This document shows, piece by piece, positions 29,849 through 63,500 of a stretch of DNA of 64,000 nt. The notes under the pieces were generated by a model that worked only from the letters and a program-made list of their open reading frames with translations, had not been told where the DNA came from and ran no database searches. The DNA lies in IMG/VR virus record IMGVR_UViG_3300043410_001471, positions 181,437-245,436 of that record, one strand, 5' to 3'. Every line of letters starts with the position of its first letter. Positions within the stretch are counted from its first letter, which is position 1. Made by a program: the position numbers and the translations under genes.

Positions 29849-32800
29849 ATGAAAAAAGTGATTTTATCGCTTCTCCTTTCAGTATCAGCTTTTGTAGGAT
29901 TTGGACAAGTAACCACTTCCTCAATTTCAGGTGTTGTGAAGAATGAGAAAAACGAAGTGTTGGTTGGAGCAACAATCCAAGCAGTACACACTCCAACTGG
30001 TACGAAGTATTCTACATCTACCAATAAGTTGGGTAGTTATGTGTTACCGGCGGTTAGAGTAGGAGGACCTTACACAATTCAAGCAACATTTGTTGGTACG
30101 AAGAAAGACGAGGTTACAGATGTTAATACCCAATTAGGTACTACATCAAATGTGAATTTTTTATTAGTTGATGAGAACAAAACCTTAAAAGAGGTTGTTG
30201 TAGTTTCTACTCGAAATAACATTATATCGAGAGAAAGAACAGGTGCATCTCAACAATTCACTCGTAGAGATTTACAAAACATCCCAATTACGGGAGCAAG
30301 AACAATCGATGGTATTACAAAGTACAATCCAAACGGAAACGGAAACTCATTCGGAGCACAAGATTCTCGTTTGAATAACTTTACAATTGATGGTTCTCAA
30401 TTCAATAATGGATTCGGTTTAGGTTCATCAGCACAAGCGGGTGGTAGAACCGGAGCATCGGCAATTTCTTTAGATGCTATTGAGCAACTTCAGGTTAATA
30501 TTGCACCTTTTGATATTCGTCAGAGTGGGTTTACTGGCGCAGGTATCAATGCAGTAACAAGAAGTGGTACAAACGAAATTGAAGGTAGTGTTTATCAAAC
30601 ACAAAGAGATAATAGTTCTACATATGTAGGTGATAACGCAAGAGGAACAAAAGTAACTGCATCTAAATTTGATGAGAAAGTACAAGGTTTCCGTTTAGGT
30701 GCACCAATCATTAAGAACAAATTGTTCATCTTTGGTAACTACGAACAAATTGAGAAAACTGAACCAGGTACAACTTGGATTTCAACAGGTTCTCCATTGA
30801 CAGGTTCACAAATTAGTAGACCAACTTATACACAATTATCAGACTTATCTAAATTTATGCAAGATAAGTTTAATTACACAACAGGTCCATTCGAAGGATA
30901 TTCTAACACAAACGCATCTAAGAAATTCTTAGTTCGTATGGATTGGAACATCAACGACAAACATAAATTAACGGCTCGTTATGTGCATCACGATTCTGAA
31001 GCAGAGATTAATATTTCAAACTCTACATCAGCAGGATTCGGTAATAGAACAACTTCAGCATTAGCAATGAGTTTCCAAAATAGTGGTTATATCATTATGG
31101 ATAACACTCGTTCTTATGTATTGGAATTAAACTCTAAATTATCAAATACTTTACATAATAACTTAATCGTTGGTTATGATAAGCAAATTGAGGATAGAGC
31201 ATATCGTTCTCAAATGTTCCCAACAATCGATATTAAGGATGGTGCAACAACTCTTACATCAGTAGGTTTTGACCCATTCACTCCAGGAAATAAGTTAGAT
31301 TACAATACTTTCCACATTACAAACAACTTAACAAAGTACGCTGATAAGCACACTTTGACATTAGGTTTTAATTATGAGAAATACCAATCTAATAACTTAT
31401 TCTTCCCAGCATCTAATGGTGTTTATATTTTCAATAGTTTAAGTGATTTCTACACTGCAGCTAATCAATCATTAGCAAATGGTGGAGCACCTTCAACATT
31501 AGTTCCAGCTCGTTTCCAATTCCGTTATTCGGCATTACCGGGAGCAGTTGAACCAATGCAAACTTTGAAAACTGATAGATTAGATGTTTACGGACAAGAT
31601 GAGTTCCAAGCAACTGAAAACTTAAAGTTCACTTTTGGTTTAAGAGCAGCAATCATCTCATTCGAACAAACTGCATTGGAAAATCCAGCAGTAACCGCAA
31701 TGACATTTGCAGGTGGATTGAAGTTTAACACAGGTGTATTACCAAAAACACAAACACTTTTCGAACCTCGTTTCGGATTTAACCATGATGTATTTGGTGA
31801 TAGAAAAACACAAGTTAGAGGTGGTACGGGTATCTTCACTGGTCGTCCTCCATATGTGTTTATCTCAAACCAAGTGGGTAACAATGGTGTATTGACAGGG
31901 TATATTGATGTGAGTGGTTCTGCGGCAGCTAAATATGGTTTCACTGCAGACCCTAATAAATACTTTATCCCATCAACTCCAACTTTACCATCTACATTTG
32001 ATTTAGCATTTACGGAAGAGAACTATAAGTTCCCACAAGTTTGGAAATCAAACATCGCAGTTGACCAAAAGTTACCATTCGGTTTCATAGGTACTGCTGA
32101 ATATATCCAAAATGTAAACTTAAACGCAGTTCATTATTACAACGCAAACTTTGGTGTTCCAACTGGCGTATTCGCAGGTGTTGATAAGAGAGCAAAGTAT
32201 GCAGGAACTGATGCAGGTGTTAGAGTAAATGGTAATGTTTCAAACGCAATCGTATTAGCTAATTCAGATAATACTCGTTTCAGTTCATTAACATTGAAAT
32301 TAGAATATCCTTACCAAAAAGGTATCTTCGGTTCATTTGCATGGACAGTATCGGATGCTAAAGACTTTATGAGCGCGGGTTCAATCGCTTCAGGTAGTTG
32401 GACAGGTGCTAGAAGTATCAATGGTAACAACGAATTAAACTTAGCTAATTCTGATAACTTATCTCCAAATCGTTTAGTTGGTTTGTTAGGATATAGATTA
32501 GAATATGGTAAAGGTTTAGGTGGAGCAACTTCATTCACATTAGGTTATGTAGGAAATCAGGGTAATCCATTCTCTTACACAATTGGTGGTGATATGAATG
32601 GTGATAGAATTGCAGGTAACGAATTAATCTTCGTTCCATCACAAATGAGTGATATCAAATTCGCACCATTGACAGTTGGTACAAGAACTTATACTGAAGC
32701 TGAACAACAAGCAGCATTTTGGTCTTACATCGAGCAAGACGAATACTTATCTACTCGTAGAGGTCAATATGCTGAAAGAAATGGTTCATTCTTACCAATG

Positions 32801-33121
32801 TTACATAGATTCGACTTATCAGTTGTACAAGATATCTATGTAAAGGTTAAAGGTAAAAAGAATACAATTCAAATCAGAGCAGATATCTTAAACTTTGGTA
32901 ACTTATTGAACAATGAGTGGGGTGTTTCTCAAAGAGCAACTATCCCAACTATCTTAAACTATTCAACTACTAATTCGGCAGGTGAACCAGTTTATAAGTT
33001 AGCAACTCAAAAATTAGCAGATGGTTCTACTATCTTAGCTAGAGATACTTATCAATATAATTCATCAGTATTTGATGTATGGTCAGCACAATTAGGAATT
33101 CGTTATATTTTTGGAAAATAA
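29849..33121 (+). CDS. TonB-dependent outer-membrane receptor (Oar/SusC-like, N-terminal carboxypeptidase-regulatory-like domain)
   Basis: Signal peptide (FG|Q), plug motif NNFTIDG...GGINAVTRSG, C-terminal QLGIRYIF. Confidence 0.92.
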   Translation: MKKVILSLLLSVSAFVGFGQVTTSSISGVVKNEKNEVLVGATIQAVHTPTGTKYSTSTNKLGSYVLPAVRVGGPYTIQATFVGTKKDEVTDVNTQLGTTSNVNFLLVDENKTLKEVVVVSTRNNIISRERTGASQQFTRRDLQNIPITGARTIDGITKYNPNGNGNSFGAQDSRLNNFTIDGSQFNNGFGLGSSAQAGGRTGASAISLDAIEQLQVNIAPFDIRQSGFTGAGINAVTRSGTNEIEGSVYQTQRDNSSTYVGDNARGTKVTASKFDEKVQGFRLGAPIIKNKLFIFGNYEQIEKTEPGTTWISTGSPLTGSQISRPTYTQLSDLSKFMQDKFNYTTGPFEGYSNTNASKKFLVRMDWNINDKHKLTARYVHHDSEAEINISNSTSAGFGNRTTSALAMSFQNSGYIIMDNTRSYVLELNSKLSNTLHNNLIVGYDKQIEDRAYRSQMFPTIDIKDGATTLTSVGFDPFTPGNKLDYNTFHITNNLTKYADKHTLTLGFNYEKYQSNNLFFPASNGVYIFNSLSDFYTAANQSLANGGAPSTLVPARFQFRYSALPGAVEPMQTLKTDRLDVYGQDEFQATENLKFTFGLRAAIISFEQTALENPAVTAMTFAGGLKFNTGVLPKTQTLFEPRFGFNHDVFGDRKTQVRGGTGIFTGRPPYVFISNQVGNNGVLTGYIDVSGSAAAKYGFTADPNKYFIPSTPTLPSTFDLAFTEENYKFPQVWKSNIAVDQKLPFGFIGTAEYIQNVNLNAVHYYNANFGVPTGVFAGVDKRAKYAGTDAGVRVNGNVSNAIVLANSDNTRFSSLTLKLEYPYQKGIFGSFAWTVSDAKDFMSAGSIASGSWTGARSINGNNELNLANSDNLSPNRLVGLLGYRLEYGKGLGGATSFTLGYVGNQGNPFSYTIGGDMNGDRIAGNELIFVPSQMSDIKFAPLTVGTRTYTEAEQQAAFWSYIEQDEYLSTRRGQYAERNGSFLPMLHRFDLSVVQDIYVKVKGKKNTIQIRADILNFGNLLNNEWGVSQRATIPTILNYSTTNSAGEPVYKLATQKLADGSTILARDTYQYNSSVFDVWSAQLGIRYIFGK

Positions 33122-33186: not shown

Positions 33187-34854
<1,668 letters not shown>

Positions 34855-54465: not shown

Positions 54466-54839
54466 GGGGATGCCCGGTATTGACAGGTATGAAGTGTTAG
54501 TACAATTGATGCAAGCAGGATTAGATGGAAATCCTTAAACACCTATCGAACAATAAACGCAGTAGAATTATCTACAATGACCTTCGAAGATGCTATGGCA
54601 TTCGTTGGTGCTGATTTAGCAGTAGCTGCCTAATCTCTCCCGCACACATCGTGGGACTTGAAATAGAATGTGAACCCAGGTGGATACCAATTGAACCCGA
54701 AATCGAATTGGAAACATTAATGATAACGAATGTATAAATCTTTATCTATTTTGTCAGTTAAGAAAAACTGACTAAGCTTGTGAATGAGGTTTATTAAACC
54801 ATATTTTGGACGAGGGTTCGACTCCCTCCATCTCCACCA
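54466..54839 (+). ncRNA. ssrA: tmRNA; predicted tag (A)AVELSTMTFEDAMAFVGADLAVAA*
   Basis: GGGGATG/CATCTCC-ACCA acceptor with G3.U70, TTGAC after the 5' end, GGGTTCGACTCCC T-arm, tag ORF 54559-54633 ending AVAA. Confidence 0.93.
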
Positions 54840-55125: not shown

Positions 55126-55509
55126 ATGAAACTAAAAGACTTATTAAACGAAAGTGTAGTTGCCAAAGATGGTAAAGTAACATCAAGTGGTAATCTTATC
55201 GGTTATTATGAATTCGATAGAGATTCAGATTCTTTTTGGGTAGATGATGTAAAGAAAGGCAAAGGTCAATTATCATTTGAAACCAAAAAGGAAGTTGAAG
55301 ATTACTTTAAGAAGAATGAAAAAGATGCTATCAAACATTTAGGAAAATTGAGAGAATCCATTCCAGAAGCAACAATGCATGATATGACAAGAGAAAAGGC
55401 ATTGGATAATCTTAAAGATGTAATTCATAATATCAGACCTTATAGTAAGGAAGTAGTTAAACATTGTGAAGCAGCTATTGCAATCATAGAGAAATTTGAA
55501 AAACGATAA
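55126..55509 (+). CDS. Small protein with MKLKDLLNE N-terminus
   Basis: ATG 55126 preferred; second LRES site internally. Confidence 0.75.
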   Translation: MKLKDLLNESVVAKDGKVTSSGNLIGYYEFDRDSDSFWVDDVKKGKGQLSFETKKEVEDYFKKNEKDAIKHLGKLRESIPEATMHDMTREKALDNLKDVIHNIRPYSKEVVKHCEAAIAIIEKFEKR

Positions 55510-56261
55510 TGATTAAGTTAAAAGATTTATTAAATTCAAACATATTAAATGAGGGTGTAGATGACCCGGGTATTCTTAAATGTGTATTTTTAGCAGGAGG
55601 ACCTGGTAGTGGTAAATCGAAGGTAGCTGCAGATTTGTTTGGTGTACAAGGTATAGCAACATTTTCGGCAAGTGGATTGAAGATGGTGAATTCTGATATC
55701 GCATTTGAAGCTCAATTAAAAAAGAGTGGTATTGACCCAAAAGATTTAGGTAAAATTGAAAAGGAAGACCCTGCATTATGGGATTTCATTACTAAATCAA
55801 AAGAAGGTCCGAGAGAAACGGGAAAAGGAATTACTCAAAAAACCAAAGCATTTTATGAAGAGGGTAGATTGGGTATGATTATAGATGGTACGGGTGATGA
55901 TGTGGCTAAAATCAGAAAGCAAAAAGCAAGAGCAGAAGAGTTAGGATACGATACATATATGGTATTTGTGAATACATCATTGGAAATAGCTCAGGCTCGT
56001 AACGCTAAAAGAAGTAGAAGTTTGCCAGAATCATTGGTTAATGATATATGGAAAGAATGTCAGCACAATTTAGGAGCATTTCAAACCCTATTTAGTGGTA
56101 ATTTCCGTATCATAGATAACACAAAGGATGGTAACAATATAACATCAAGCATTCAAAAAGCAGTTGATGGATTCATAAGAGAACCATTGAGAAATGCAGT
56201 TGGTAAGAAATGGGTAACGAATGCAAGAATTTTAAAAAACGCAAATATAATTAAGAAATGA
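55509..56261 (+). CDS. Zeta-toxin/AAA_33-like P-loop kinase with MIKLKDLL N-terminus
   Basis: LAGGPGSGKS, MIIDGT, ARNAKRSR. Confidence 0.75.
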   Translation: MIKLKDLLNSNILNEGVDDPGILKCVFLAGGPGSGKSKVAADLFGVQGIATFSASGLKMVNSDIAFEAQLKKSGIDPKDLGKIEKEDPALWDFITKSKEGPRETGKGITQKTKAFYEEGRLGMIIDGTGDDVAKIRKQKARAEELGYDTYMVFVNTSLEIAQARNAKRSRSLPESLVNDIWKECQHNLGAFQTLFSGNFRIIDNTKDGNNITSSIQKAVDGFIREPLRNAVGKKWVTNARILKNANIIKK

Positions 56262-56959
56262 TAAAGGCAGGTAGATACGATTTAAACGAAGCATCATTAG
56301 GTAGAATATATCAACATGTGGTTTCAAATCCTAAAATGAAAAATTGGGGAGTAGTAACTGCAAGTAGAGGTGAATTGACACCTGCTGAAAACAAACAAAG
56401 AAACAAAGAGTTAGAAAACGATTTGCGTAAATTGGGATACGGGTTTGTTCATGTAGATGGTATGTGGCAGGAATGTAGACAACCAAATACGGAATATAAG
56501 GATTGTCCAGAAGATATGAAAGTACCAACTGAAGAGAAATCTTTATTTGTACCTAACATATCACAACAACATATTCAGGCATTAGGTAAGAAGTATCAAC
56601 AAGATAGTGTATTATTTGCGGATGAAGCAACTAAAGCCAAAGGTGAAGCAACATTTATTGATTCAAAATCAGGTGAAGCATTCAACATTGGTAAGTTTGC
56701 ACCTGGCAAAATAGCACAAGGTTATTCTAAAATGAAAGGTGGTAAAGTATTCACATTTGAACCACAAGAAGAGCCTAAAGAAGAACCAAAGGATGATATG
56801 AAGTTGAAATCTTTATTACCTAAAGGAATATTGGATAAAACTGTTATGAATCCTGATACAGGTAAAATGATTAAGGTTAAATCGGCGTTGAAATACGATG
56901 ATGACCATAAGGTTAAGCAGGCTGCAAAATCAATGATTAAAACTGCTTTACATAAATAA
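56258..56959 (+). CDS. Conserved-looking phage protein with C-terminal basic module
   Basis: LNEASLGR; TASR..EN..RN..L..DLR..GYG; LGKKYQQDSVL. Confidence 0.7.
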   Translation: MIKAGRYDLNEASLGRIYQHVVSNPKMKNWGVVTASRGELTPAENKQRNKELENDLRKLGYGFVHVDGMWQECRQPNTEYKDCPEDMKVPTEEKSLFVPNISQQHIQALGKKYQQDSVLFADEATKAKGEATFIDSKSGEAFNIGKFAPGKIAQGYSKMKGGKVFTFEPQEEPKEEPKDDMKLKSLLPKGILDKTVMNPDTGKMIKVKSALKYDDDHKVKQAAKSMIKTALHK

Positions 56960-58967: not shown

Positions 58968-59837
58968 AAAGATTATACATAGTAGATTCGTTCTACATAG
59001 TATAACAACGGCCGCCTATGGTCGTGAAATAAACTACGAAAGTAGGATAAAGTGGGTACATTGGTTAATGTAACTGCGGCTACTCCCCCGTAAGGGAGCA
59101 AGCTTGAGTAGGCAAGTGAGATATCATTCTGACTTTGTAGGTGGGGGTAACACTATCATCGAAGAGCCGGAATGACTGGGCAAATGTAGATTGTTCAGTT
59201 GAGATGGGAACATCAATAAGAATAACTCATAGAATTATTGTGAAAAGTAAGGACTTAATCTCTCCTTATTATTGCGTGATTCAATACAAAAGTGGTCTTG
59301 AGAATCAAGCTATCCGAAAGGACGTGAGATAAGATAATGTACGAGTGGTGTCGTTATTATCCTTTAGACTGGGACACCAATCCCTTCTATTGAAGATGAC
59401 TTGAAGTATGGTGATAGGGATATCACATTGAGTAGTATAGTATTCTGTTGTTCAAAAGATAACGGAGCTGGTGGCAAACCACTACTCGAATCCATCTACA
59501 AACCAAAACTCATTTGCATTTTGACGCAAAATCATAAATCAAGTAAGCAAAAGTGTTTGCCAGTTTCAGATGAAAGGTGTGTACATAGTAGGGAGTTGTT
59601 CCTTGCCACGATACCTCCGCAAGAGGTCTGTGATTCTTTTGAAAGGTTTCTAGCATCGCAAGTGTGAATCAGCTCGGCAGGGTTGAAGAAAATAAGTAGG
59701 AAGAGAGTAATCTGAAACTCTAAGAGTGGTTGGCTATACTAACCCACATTGAATTGGTACATCTCAAAAGGGTGTGGAAAAGAAAGGAAACAATAATCTT
59801 TCGAAAGCTGGTTCACAAAAAGGAGTATTCTCATCCT
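58968..59837 (+). ncRNA. Large structured ncRNA, GOLLD-like (boundaries approximate)
   Basis: ~870 nt, GC-richer than flanks, no convincing ORF, many short hairpins (CTAC-GAAA-GTAG 59034, CTCCC..GGGAG 59083, ACCTC-CGCAA-GAGGT 59613), directly upstream of the tRNA array. Confidence 0.7.
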
Positions 59838-62231: not shown

Positions 62232-62687
62232 ATGGTTTATAGAAAACTACATGATGGAACAAAAGTTGAATTAGAAACATATATCGCTGAATATATGAAT
62301 GAACATGAAGGAGTTGAAATACTAATTGGATGTGATTCACAAAACTTCAGAGATAAAACTATCTATGCGATTGTTGTAGCATTATATACGCCAGGTAGAG
62401 GAGCGCATGTATTGTATAATCGGTGGAATGCACCGAGAGAGTACACTCGTTCAGTAAGATTATTAAATGAAGTTTGGTTTGCAGTTGAAGTAGCAGAAGA
62501 ATTACGAAATGCCGGAGTTCAAAAAGCAACTTGGATTGATGTGGATTTAAATCCAGACCCTAAATACAAATCTAATGAAGTGTTCAGACAAGCAGTAGGT
62601 ATGGTTGAAGGTATGGGTTATAATGTACGATACAAAACTTTAGGTCCAATCGCAACATATTGTGCGGACCATTTAGTAAAAATGTAG
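62232..62687 (+). CDS. YkuK/DUF458 RNase H-like protein
   Basis: ILIGCDSQ, RLLNEVW, IDVD, ADH; ATG 62232 (the ORF-track extension overlaps tRNAs). Confidence 0.85.
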   Translation: MVYRKLHDGTKVELETYIAEYMNEHEGVEILIGCDSQNFRDKTIYAIVVALYTPGRGAHVLYNRWNAPREYTRSVRLLNEVWFAVEVAEELRNAGVQKATWIDVDLNPDPKYKSNEVFRQAVGMVEGMGYNVRYKTLGPIATYCADHLVKM

Positions 62688-62773
62688 AAAATAAATATAT
62701 AGAATTAGTTGACATTATAAAAAACTTTTCGTATATTTGTAATGTTCTTTGAAATAATGGTTTAGTAAGTAAC

Positions 62774-62847
62774 GCTCCGTTGGACAAATCGGTTAAGTCG
62801 CATCCCTTTCACGGATGAGATTAGGGGTTCGAGCCCCCTACGGAGTA
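62774..62847 (+). tRNA. tRNA-Glu(TTC)
   Basis: CATCC-CTTTCAC-GGATG. Confidence 0.93.
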
Positions 62848-62955
62848 CAACTCACATATCAAACACTTTAATTCGGTCAAGCCACATTGAGCCGTTAGTA
62901 TGTGAATAGGTAAGAGAGAGGTGGTGGCTGGTACATCTCTCTTACTACAACTTTT

Positions 62956-63028
62956 GCCTCCGTAGCTCATTTGGTAGAGCAGCTGATTTGTAATCAGCAG
63001 GTGGTTGGTTCGAGCCCGACCGGAGGCT
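62956..63028 (+). tRNA. tRNA-Thr(TGT)
   Basis: GCTGA-TTTGTAA-TCAGC. Confidence 0.93.
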
Positions 63029-63163
63029 CAATGATTACTGAAATTGAATGATACGAGCCCCGAAAGTTCGAAATGAGTCAATTGGTAATCATAGAGTGGA
63101 TTCATCAGTTGATGAAAACCAATCGGGGGTTGTCCCACTAGAATGGAAACATCCCCTGCAATC

Positions 63164-63237
63164 GGTACTTTGGTGTAGAGGCCTAACATGCTTCCCTGTC
63201 ACGGAAGAGACCACGGGTTCGAATCCCGTAAGTACCG
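63164..63237 (+). tRNA. tRNA-Asp(GTC)
   Basis: CTTCC-CTGTCAC-GGAAG, G73. Confidence 0.93.
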
Positions 63238-63426
63238 CGAAACCTGTTTTGATGGTAAATCCCAACATAATCCATCATCGTATAAGGGGTTGGGCAGATT
63301 GAGAAGCTGTCTTCGCTACGAAAGCGGAAAATATCTACAAATAAGATGAATAGAACACACTTTTGAGTTAGTGGCATGCTAAAGGTTCTCATCTGGTACA
63401 CAAGACCAGAGTTCATCTTATTATTT

Positions 63427-63500
<74 letters not shown>

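What the first reader, a model, noticed from the sequence alone, without database searches (positions are those of the whole stretch)
62852..62945. Kissing-loop RNA directly after tRNA-Glu
Seen: stem TCACATA/TATGTGA (62852/62899) enclosing hairpin CGGTCAA..TTGAGCCG whose loop AGCCAC (62880-85) is exactly complementary to GTGGCT (62924-29) in the loop of a second 10-bp hairpin GTAAGAGAGA/TCTCTCTTAC. Inference: an unannotated pseudoknotted ncRNA, possibly a tRNA-processing ribozyme. HDV-like theta ribozymes are known next to phage tRNAs, but I could not fit that fold.
Basis: partly seen in the sequence, partly recalled or inferred. Interest (0 to 1): 0.62.

Follow-up and report, generated by a model that had tools for sequence, protein, structure and literature searches.

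The report
Kissing-loop small RNA in phage tRNA array
The 107-base gap between two tRNA genes of this freshwater jumbo phage holds a real, conserved small RNA of about 95 bases. Two hairpin loops in it pair with each other; it matches no catalogued RNA family, and its job is still unknown.

Summary
The tRNA-Glu/tRNA-Thr spacer (62849-62955, + strand) belongs to a family I call "module A". I found 22 distinct sequences in uncultured phage and freshwater or marine metagenome contigs.

Four helices are kept by compensatory changes:
- P1, 7-10 bp
- P3, 4 bp
- P4, 10-12 bp

Overall, 99.2% of pair cells form standard pairs and 9 pairs carry double changes. Four of the six kissing pairs vary while staying paired. 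Many G·U pairs place the RNA on the tRNA strand.

Module A is single-copy and as conserved as its flanking tRNAs. It is nevertheless optional: relatives have 4-7 nt or unrelated modules at the same site. It can also follow tRNA-Trp or tRNA-Leu.

Rfam 15 has no match. The HDV-like/theta fold fails because no P2 helix can form. There is no similarity to T4 rnaC/rnaD.

Best reading: an independent small-RNA cassette co-transcribed with the tRNAs, probably released by RNase Z and RNase P. It would fold into two side-by-side arms clamped by the kiss and act in trans. A new ribozyme or a self-assembling RNA is not excluded. No expression data could be obtained.

The parts
62709..62737 (+). Sigma-70-like promoter (TTGACA, 17 nt, TATATT; 11 of 12 matches) about 35 nt upstream of tRNA-Glu. 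It is the likely start of the transcript that carries the element.
   Evidence: This is a consensus match only and has not been shown to be active.
62774..62848 (+). tRNA-Glu (UUC), with no encoded CCA. Its 3' processing would define the 5' end of the element.
62849..62955 (+). Module A, the whole tRNA-Glu/tRNA-Thr spacer. It is a member of a 22-sequence family of pseudoknotted small RNAs.
   Evidence: CM score 103 bits, E about 1e-19
62852..62859 (+). P1, 5' strand (UCACAUAU).
   Evidence: Pairs with 62898-62905. Two pairs covary and L027 uses a shifted register. P1 is 7-10 bp across the family.
62860..62873 (+). J1/3 junction. It is 14 nt here and 5-8 nt in most relatives, and begins with a conserved CA.
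62874..62877 (+). P3, 5' strand (CGGU).
   Evidence: Pairs with 62891-62894. The middle pair occurs as A-U (12), G-C (6) and C-G (4). The closing U·G is invariant.
62880..62885 (+). Kissing strand in loop L3 (AGCCAC). L3 spans 62878-62890.
   Evidence: Complementary to 62924-62929. Four of the six pairs vary while staying paired in relatives.
62891..62894 (+). P3, 3' strand (GCCG).
62895..62897 (+). J3/1 junction (UUA), nearly invariant.
62898..62905 (+). P1, 3' strand (GUAUGUGA).
62909..62919 (+). P4, 5' strand (11 nt).
   Evidence: Pairs with 62936-62946. The second pair from the outer end occurs as A-U (10), G-C (10) and G·U (2). The outermost pair occurs as G-C (19) and G·U (3).
62924..62929 (+). 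Kissing strand in loop L4 (GUGGCU). L4 spans 62920-62935, and G62930, A62933 and C62934 in it are invariant.
62936..62946 (+). P4, 3' strand.
62947..62955 (+). Unconserved tail, which doubles as the 5' leader of tRNA-Thr. RNase P cleavage at 62955/62956 would define the 3' end of the element.
   Evidence: The processing step is inferred.
62956..63029 (+). tRNA-Thr (UGU).

Best explanation
Module A is a stand-alone small-RNA gene of about 95 nt. It sits as an optional cassette inside the tRNA operon of a lineage of uncultured, mostly freshwater, T4-distant jumbo phages.

Shown:
- It lies on the tRNA strand, 1-6 nt after a tRNA 3' end and 5-9 nt before the next tRNA or another RNA module.
- It folds into arm 1 (P1 of 7-10 bp topped by a 4-bp P3 with a 13-nt loop) and arm 2 (P4 of 10-12 bp with a 16-nt loop).
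- The two loops pair through a 6-bp helix that covaries.

Inferred:
- It is transcribed from the promoter at 62709-62737 as part of the tRNA-Glu/module A/tRNA-Thr precursor.
- The host enzymes that mature the tRNAs cut it out: RNase Z or 3' trimming after tRNA-Glu, and RNase P before tRNA-Thr.
- The two arms, of similar length and joined by a 1-4 nt linker, lie side by side and are clamped by the kiss into a compact, nuclease-resistant body.
- Its conserved unpaired bases (UC/CA at the start of L3, AUU after the kiss, UUA in J3/1, UA before P4, G..AC in L4) form a binding surface for a protein or RNA partner, so the RNA acts in trans during infection.

The partner and the biological effect are unknown.
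For: - Family and context.
- Covariation: on A3 (22 sequences), 99.2% of cells are paired, 9 pairs have changes on both sides, and 0 of 500 shuffles reach the observed values. Slid controls give 24-50% paired.
- Kissing helix variants: AGCCAC/GUGGCU, AGCCGU/ACGGCU, AGCCGC/GCGGCU, the G·U intermediate AGCCGU/GCGGCU, AACCAU/GUGGUU and GCUAC/GUAGC.
- Independent fold: RNAalifold finds P1, P3 and P4 on its own.
- Strand: G·U pairs are common (U·G in 19 of 22 at the P1 end), so the structure exists only on the + strand.
- Constraint: identity to the window is 67-92% for module A and 67-87% for the flanking tRNAs.
- Not coding: lengths of 93-107 nt differ by non-multiples of three.
- Copy number: one per genome.
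- Transcription signals: a promoter lies upstream and there is no terminator inside.
- Independence from the tRNA: it also follows tRNA-Trp and an odd tRNA-Leu.
- Cassette behaviour: it combines freely with unrelated modules B and C.
- Precedent: T4 rnaD and rnaC lie 1 and 6 nt after tRNA-Arg in the T4 tRNA cluster.
Against:
- No partner was found. Of 334 G000 ORFs, none tracks module A strictly across genomes.
- The element is dispensable in relatives, so any function is accessory.
- Covariation cannot tell an intramolecular kiss from an intermolecular one.
- Members were collected with sequence patterns that fix parts of the motif, so the apparent invariance is partly imposed.
Confidence: 0.5

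Rival explanations
1. Module A is a new class of self-cleaving ribozyme that trims the 3' trailer of the upstream tRNA, or frees itself. It would be functionally like theta/HDV-like ribozymes next to phage tRNAs, but with a different fold.
For: - It always lies a few nucleotides after a tRNA 3' end.
- It has a pseudoknotted core with conserved unpaired bases.
- Theta ribozymes occupy the same kind of site (PMC10879173).
Against: - No ribozyme family of Rfam 15 matches at E<=10.
- HDV-like P2 is absent and the catalytic-C position is paired or is U.
- The distance from the tRNA end to P1 varies from 1 to 6 nt, so there is no fixed cleavage site relative to the tRNA.
- The same tRNA pair matures without the element in relatives.
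Confidence: 0.1
2. Module A is a cis-acting spacer element. As a structured trailer/leader it would insulate the folding of the two tRNAs, or protect or direct processing of the precursor, with no function after release.
For: - It lies between tRNAs in one transcript.
- Its compact fold could block 3'-5' exonucleases (inference).
Against: - Relatives join the same two tRNAs with 4-7 nt.
- It serves three different upstream tRNAs and is often followed by another module rather than a tRNA.
- Conservation equal to that of the tRNAs, and a covarying loop-loop helix, are more than a simple insulator would need.
Confidence: 0.15
3. The complementary loops pair between molecules, so the RNA forms dimers or closed oligomers. 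That would make it a small relative in principle of the RNA-only assemblies formed by GOLLD and ROOL, which are also encoded near phage tRNA islands.
For: - L3 and L4 are mutually complementary, so head-to-tail or reciprocal kissing is possible.
- A GOLLD RNA lies 3 kb upstream in the same array.
- GOLLD and ROOL assemble through inter-subunit contacts (PMC12286853).
Against: - Arm lengths (P1+P3 against P4) and the 1-4 nt linker fit an intramolecular side-by-side arrangement (inference).
- There is no direct evidence either way.
Confidence: 0.1
4. It is a chance set of hairpins in a spacer, or a decayed tRNA gene.
For: About 7 sites in the window, this one among them, pass a loose single-sequence version of the test.
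Against: - 22 homologues keep all four helices through compensatory changes.
- There is no tRNA-model or ARAGORN signal in the spacer.
- Conservation equals that of the tRNAs.
Confidence: 0.02

Closest known systems
Bacteriophage T4 small stable RNAs rnaC and rnaD (species 1 and 2 RNA)
   Same: They are small RNAs of about 120-140 nt encoded inside a phage tRNA cluster, on the tRNA strand and within a few nucleotides of a tRNA end. From general knowledge of T4, they are matured together with the tRNAs, and their function has stayed unknown for decades.
   Different: There is no sequence or structure similarity: the module A model finds nothing at rnaC/rnaD. No loop-loop pseudoknot is known to me for the T4 RNAs (own knowledge, not tested).
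Theta / HDV-like self-cleaving ribozymes next to phage tRNAs (PMC10879173)
   Same: Position directly downstream of phage tRNAs. A stem of 7 bp or more encloses a short 3-4 bp helix, followed by a further hairpin. Pseudoknotted.
   Different: - No P2 helix, so no nested double pseudoknot.
- The pseudoknot joins two terminal loops.
- L3 is 13 nt and L4 is conserved.
- No catalytic C after P4.
- No Rfam HDV-family hit.
- Found in freshwater jumbo phages, not gut phages.
GOLLD and ROOL RNAs
   Same: Structured RNAs of unknown function encoded in phages near tRNA islands. A GOLLD copy sits in this same array.
   Different: They are 4-8 times larger, have unrelated folds, and are shown to form nanocages (PMC12286853). 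Module A is about 95 nt with one kissing helix.
Parallel-hairpin RNAs clamped by a loop-loop helix (for example the purine riboswitch aptamer P2/P3)
   Same: Architecture in principle: two helical arms of similar length held side by side by Watson-Crick pairs between their terminal loops.
   Different: There is no enclosing three-way junction, since P4 lies outside P1. There is no expression platform, no Rfam match, and the context is a tRNA operon rather than a 5' UTR. This is a recalled resemblance, not a tested relation.

Membership tests
HDV-like / theta ribozyme | P2 helix joining the segment after the P1 5' strand to the 3' end (the nested double pseudoknot) | tested here: not met
   The best J1/3-to-tail helix is 1-5 bp, AU-rich and inconsistent between members. 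It is no better than shuffles in 19 of 20 members.
HDV-like / theta ribozyme | P1 of about 7 bp enclosing a 3-bp P3 with a short L3, the P1 3' strand directly after P3, then P4 | tested here: inconclusive
   P1 of 7-10 bp, P3 of 3-4 bp and P4 are present in that order. However, L3 is 13 nt and a conserved UUA separates P3 from P1.
HDV-like / theta ribozyme | Catalytic cytosine at the first position of J4/2 | tested here: not met
   The base after the 10-bp P4 pairs with the G before P4 (G-C in 19, G·U in 3). It is U in the window, L002 and L010.
HDV-like / theta ribozyme | Match to curated covariance models of the HDV ribozyme families | tested here: not met
   No hit at E<=10 in 62680-63440, and none at gathering score in the window.
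HDV-like / theta ribozyme | Site-specific self-cleavage at the 5' end of P1 | not testable with these tools
   Needs in vitro transcription and a cleavage assay.
Other known self-cleaving ribozymes and all Rfam 15 families | Match to the family covariance model | tested here: not met
   Only the three tRNAs and chance-level hits that overlap them.
tRNA / tRNA-like gene or pseudogene | Cloverleaf detectable by ARAGORN or RF00005 | tested here: not met
   No call inside 62849-62955.
T4-type small stable RNAs of phage tRNA clusters (rnaC/rnaD) | Encoded within a phage tRNA cluster, on the same strand, abutting a tRNA | tested here: met
T4-type small stable RNAs of phage tRNA clusters (rnaC/rnaD) | Sequence or structure homology to rnaC or rnaD | tested here: not met
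   The module A model run with filters off on the T4 locus gives only chance-level hits elsewhere.
T4-type small stable RNAs of phage tRNA clusters (rnaC/rnaD) | Accumulates as a discrete, stable processed RNA | not testable with these tools
Kissing-loop (loop-loop pseudoknot) RNA | Watson-Crick complementarity between two hairpin loops that is maintained by compensatory change | tested here: met
   131 of 132 kissing-helix cells are paired or gapped; the one exception is a U/C cell in L109. Double changes occur at columns 35/81, 36/80 and 37/79, and at 33/83 in L095 when the sequence is read directly.
Intrinsic terminator | GC-rich hairpin with a short loop followed by a U run | tested here: not met
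   No terminator-like site in the spacer. The P4 loop is 16 nt and the tail is not conserved.

The most novel reading that the evidence does not exclude
Module A is catalytic or self-assembling. Either it is a previously unknown class of small self-cleaving ribozyme used by jumbo phages to cut tRNA precursors, or it is a minimal RNA that oligomerises through its complementary loops. In either case, phage tRNA arrays would be general expression platforms for exchangeable functional RNA cassettes. At least five unrelated conserved modules are seen in these spacers.
Probability: 0.15. Interest if true: 0.85.

Novelty: new variant of a known kind. Interest (0 to 1): 0.55.

Why it matters
Phage tRNA clusters have been known for 50 years to carry unexplained small RNAs (T4 species 1 and 2), and more recently GOLLD, ROOL and theta ribozymes. 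This is a new family with a well-supported fold.

The relatives also show that the gaps between tRNAs in these jumbo phages are filled by interchangeable structured RNA modules. These modules are as conserved as the tRNAs themselves. That points to the tRNA-processing machinery being used as a general way to release phage small RNAs.

The covarying kissing helix gives a ready mutate-and-rescue handle for experiments. The limits are that the function is unknown, the phages are uncultured, and the nearest cultured relative lacks the element.

Tried and rejected
- **Rfam:** the gathering scan of the window and a permissive scan of 62680-63440 found nothing in the spacer.
- **GenBank phages (blastn):** only the tRNAs match, and no cultured phage carries the element.
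- **Nearest cultured relative:** by PolB this is Microcystis phage Mel-JY01 at 50% identity. It has neither module A nor the YkuK-like gene.
- **HDV/theta fit:** rejected, no P2.
- **T4 rnaC/rnaD homology:** rejected.
- **Bacterial and archaeal genomes:** a pattern scan gave two hits that the model scores as chance, so no host or prophage copy was found.
- **Partner protein by presence/absence:** I compared 334 G000 ORFs across 2 other module-A genomes and 5 genomes without it. Two candidates came out.
  - The 114-aa ORF fails on a wider set.
  - The NodU/TobZ-type carbamoyltransferase is present in 5 of 6 complete genomes with module A and in 0 of 6 near-complete genomes without it. It is missing from one complete module-A genome and present in two partial records without module A. 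This is at most a lineage-confounded tendency.
- **Module B in the window:** absent.
- **Alternative genetic code:** none was used.

Full report
**Setting.** The window is the last 64 kb of a 245,436-bp uncultured virus record with direct terminal repeats.
- Its PolB is closest, at 50% identity, to Microcystis phage Mel-JY01, followed by T4-like cyanophages.
- From 54.4 kb to the end, the + strand carries a tmRNA, a GOLLD RNA and 23 tRNA genes.
- The finding is the 107-nt gap between tRNA-Glu (62774-62848) and tRNA-Thr (62956-63029).

**Observation.**
- Two details need correcting. A62880 was counted both as stem and as loop. The inner hairpin needs a bulged G62891.
- The spacer folds better than shuffles (-30.3 kcal/mol, z = -3.25).
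- The combination of two perfect stems and a 6-nt loop-loop complement appears in 3 of 20000 shuffles. About 7 sites in the window, this one among them, pass the same loose test.
- One sequence alone is therefore suggestive, not conclusive.

**Homologues.** The gene just upstream (62232-62684) is a PF04308 RNase H-like (YkuK-type) protein.
- It led to 42 related IMG/VR loci that keep the same tRNA order.
- Their Glu-Thr spacers range from 4 to 196 nt.
- Several hold a clear homologue of the window's spacer, and others hold unrelated sequences.
- Pattern scans of IMG/VR and of metagenome contigs, filtered with a covariance model built here (R1), raised the family to 22 distinct sequences.
- All come from uncultured phage or freshwater and marine metagenome contigs.
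- A scan of one genome per prokaryote species gave only chance hits.
- GenBank phages have no copy.

**Structure.** On the model-fitted alignment A3, I counted the structure P1 + P3 + P4 + loop-loop helix.
- 99.2% of 527 pair cells form standard pairs.
- 9 of 24 pairs show changes on both sides.
- None of 500 column shuffles reaches the observed values.
- Sliding the partners by 1-3 columns drops pairing to 24-50%.
- RNAalifold, which cannot see the pseudoknot, predicts P1, P3 (including an invariant closing U·G) and P4 on its own.

*The kissing helix.* The covariance model has no pairs for it, so it is not favoured by the alignment method. Its observed forms are:

| L3 strand | L4 strand | Note |
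|---|---|---|
| AGCCAC | GUGGCU | window |
| AGCCGU | ACGGCU | |
| AGCCGC | GCGGCU | |
| AGCCGU | GCGGCU | G·U intermediate |
| AACCAU | GUGGUU | |
| GCUAC | GUAGC | |

Four of the six pairs therefore vary while staying paired.

*Caveat on collection bias.* My first patterns fixed the AGCC/GGCU core. The core variants turned up only when I anchored the search on P1 and P4 instead. Conversely, P1 and P4 invariance in those two sequences is imposed by that pattern.

*Strand and coding.* G·U pairs are frequent, so the structure exists only on the + strand, the tRNA strand. Lengths differ by non-multiples of three, so the element is not coding.

**Conservation and distribution.**
- Identity to the window is 67-92% for module A and 67-87% for the flanking tRNAs, so the constraint is comparable.
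- There is one copy per genome.
- It is absent from 26 related records, six of them at least 90% complete.
- Three relatives join tRNA-Glu to tRNA-Thr with 4-7 nt.
- It usually follows tRNA-Glu, but also tRNA-Trp and an unusual tRNA-Leu.
- It is followed by a tRNA, by a second conserved module B, or by a third module C with a T-arm-like hairpin.
- The window's next spacer also consists of two separately occurring modules.
- Module A thus behaves as an independent, exchangeable cassette, not as part of a particular tRNA.

**Transcription.** A near-consensus sigma-70-type promoter lies at 62709-62737, and there is no terminator in the spacer. This fits co-transcription with the tRNAs but does not prove it.

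**Comparison with known families.**
- No Rfam 15 family matches.
- The HDV-like/theta fold, known next to gut-phage tRNAs (PMC10879173), fails on its defining P2 helix and on the catalytic C.
- T4 encodes rnaD and rnaC right after tRNA-Arg. That is the closest precedent in kind, but there is no homology.
- GOLLD and ROOL share the tRNA-island context and form RNA-only assemblies (PMC12286853), but they are far larger.

**Mechanism.** What is shown: a conserved two-arm fold with a loop-loop helix, in a tRNA operon, that is optional and portable.

What I infer, at about 50% confidence:
- Release by RNase Z and RNase P.
- Side-by-side packing of arms of similar length, joined by a 1-4 nt linker.
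- Action in trans through the conserved unpaired bases.

Rivals are a cis-acting spacer (0.15), a new ribozyme (0.10), intermolecular assembly (0.10) and chance (0.02).

**What could not be done.**
- A presence/absence screen for a partner protein gave no strict correlate.

**Verdict.** This is a real RNA family, new to Rfam, with a convincingly supported kissing-loop fold. The ribozyme idea is unsupported but open.

Noticed in passing
window 59428-59837 (+): A full-length GOLLD RNA (301.7 bits) lies inside the tRNA array, between tRNA-Met (58271) and tRNA-Gly (59845).
   Followed up: no
window 54466-54839 (+): A phage-encoded tmRNA with a 24-residue tag ending in AVAA. Relatives carry tmRNAs with different tags.
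   Followed up: no
window 63030-63163 (+): The tRNA-Thr/tRNA-Asp spacer is also strongly structured (z = -3.15). It is made of two halves (about 63030-63091 and 63094-63161) that occur separately, in another order, or alone in relatives. The second half is 100% identical over 67 nt in L010.
   Followed up: partly
window 63239-63426 (+): The 188-nt tRNA-Asp/tRNA-Arg spacer has no match in any related locus fetched. Its content is unknown.
   Followed up: partly
L020:4575-4666, L027:4725-4813, L044:1769-1900, L055:1212-1297, L109:2662-2780(-) and others: Module B is a second conserved spacer RNA family. It has invariant blocks, a variable insert and a covarying hairpin. It often sits directly after module A, sometimes before tRNA-Glu, and is absent from the window.
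   Followed up: partly
L004:4694-4889, L005:4614-4807, L017:5205-5400, L095 downstream of 2111: Module C is a spacer element of about 195 nt containing a T-arm-like GGTTCGA hairpin. ARAGORN does not call it a tRNA.
   Followed up: no
L055:995-1108 and 1305-1403: Two tRNA genes carry 24-nt insertions in the anticodon loop. ARAGORN finds them only in intron mode, with unstable anticodon assignment. Module A and module B lie between them.
   Followed up: partly
window 62232-62684 (+): An RNase H-like YkuK-type gene (PF04308) is embedded in the tRNA array. It is conserved in position in 42 related loci. A role in RNA processing is possible but was not tested.
   Followed up: partly
window 29849-33121 and 33205-34854 (+): The phage encodes a 1090-aa protein with a carboxypeptidase-regulatory-like domain plus an outer-membrane beta-barrel (SusC/TonB-receptor-like), and a GroEL-type chaperonin. 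The first hints at a Gram-negative, possibly Bacteroidota, host.
   Followed up: no
G000:C1:57739-59433 (outside the window): A NodU/TobZ-type carbamoyltransferase is present in 5 of 6 complete genomes with module A and in none of 6 near-complete genomes without it. There are exceptions in both directions.
   Followed up: partly
window 55509-56959 (+): An AAA_33/zeta-toxin-like kinase and a SAM-lyase-like protein lie just upstream of the tRNA array.
   Followed up: no
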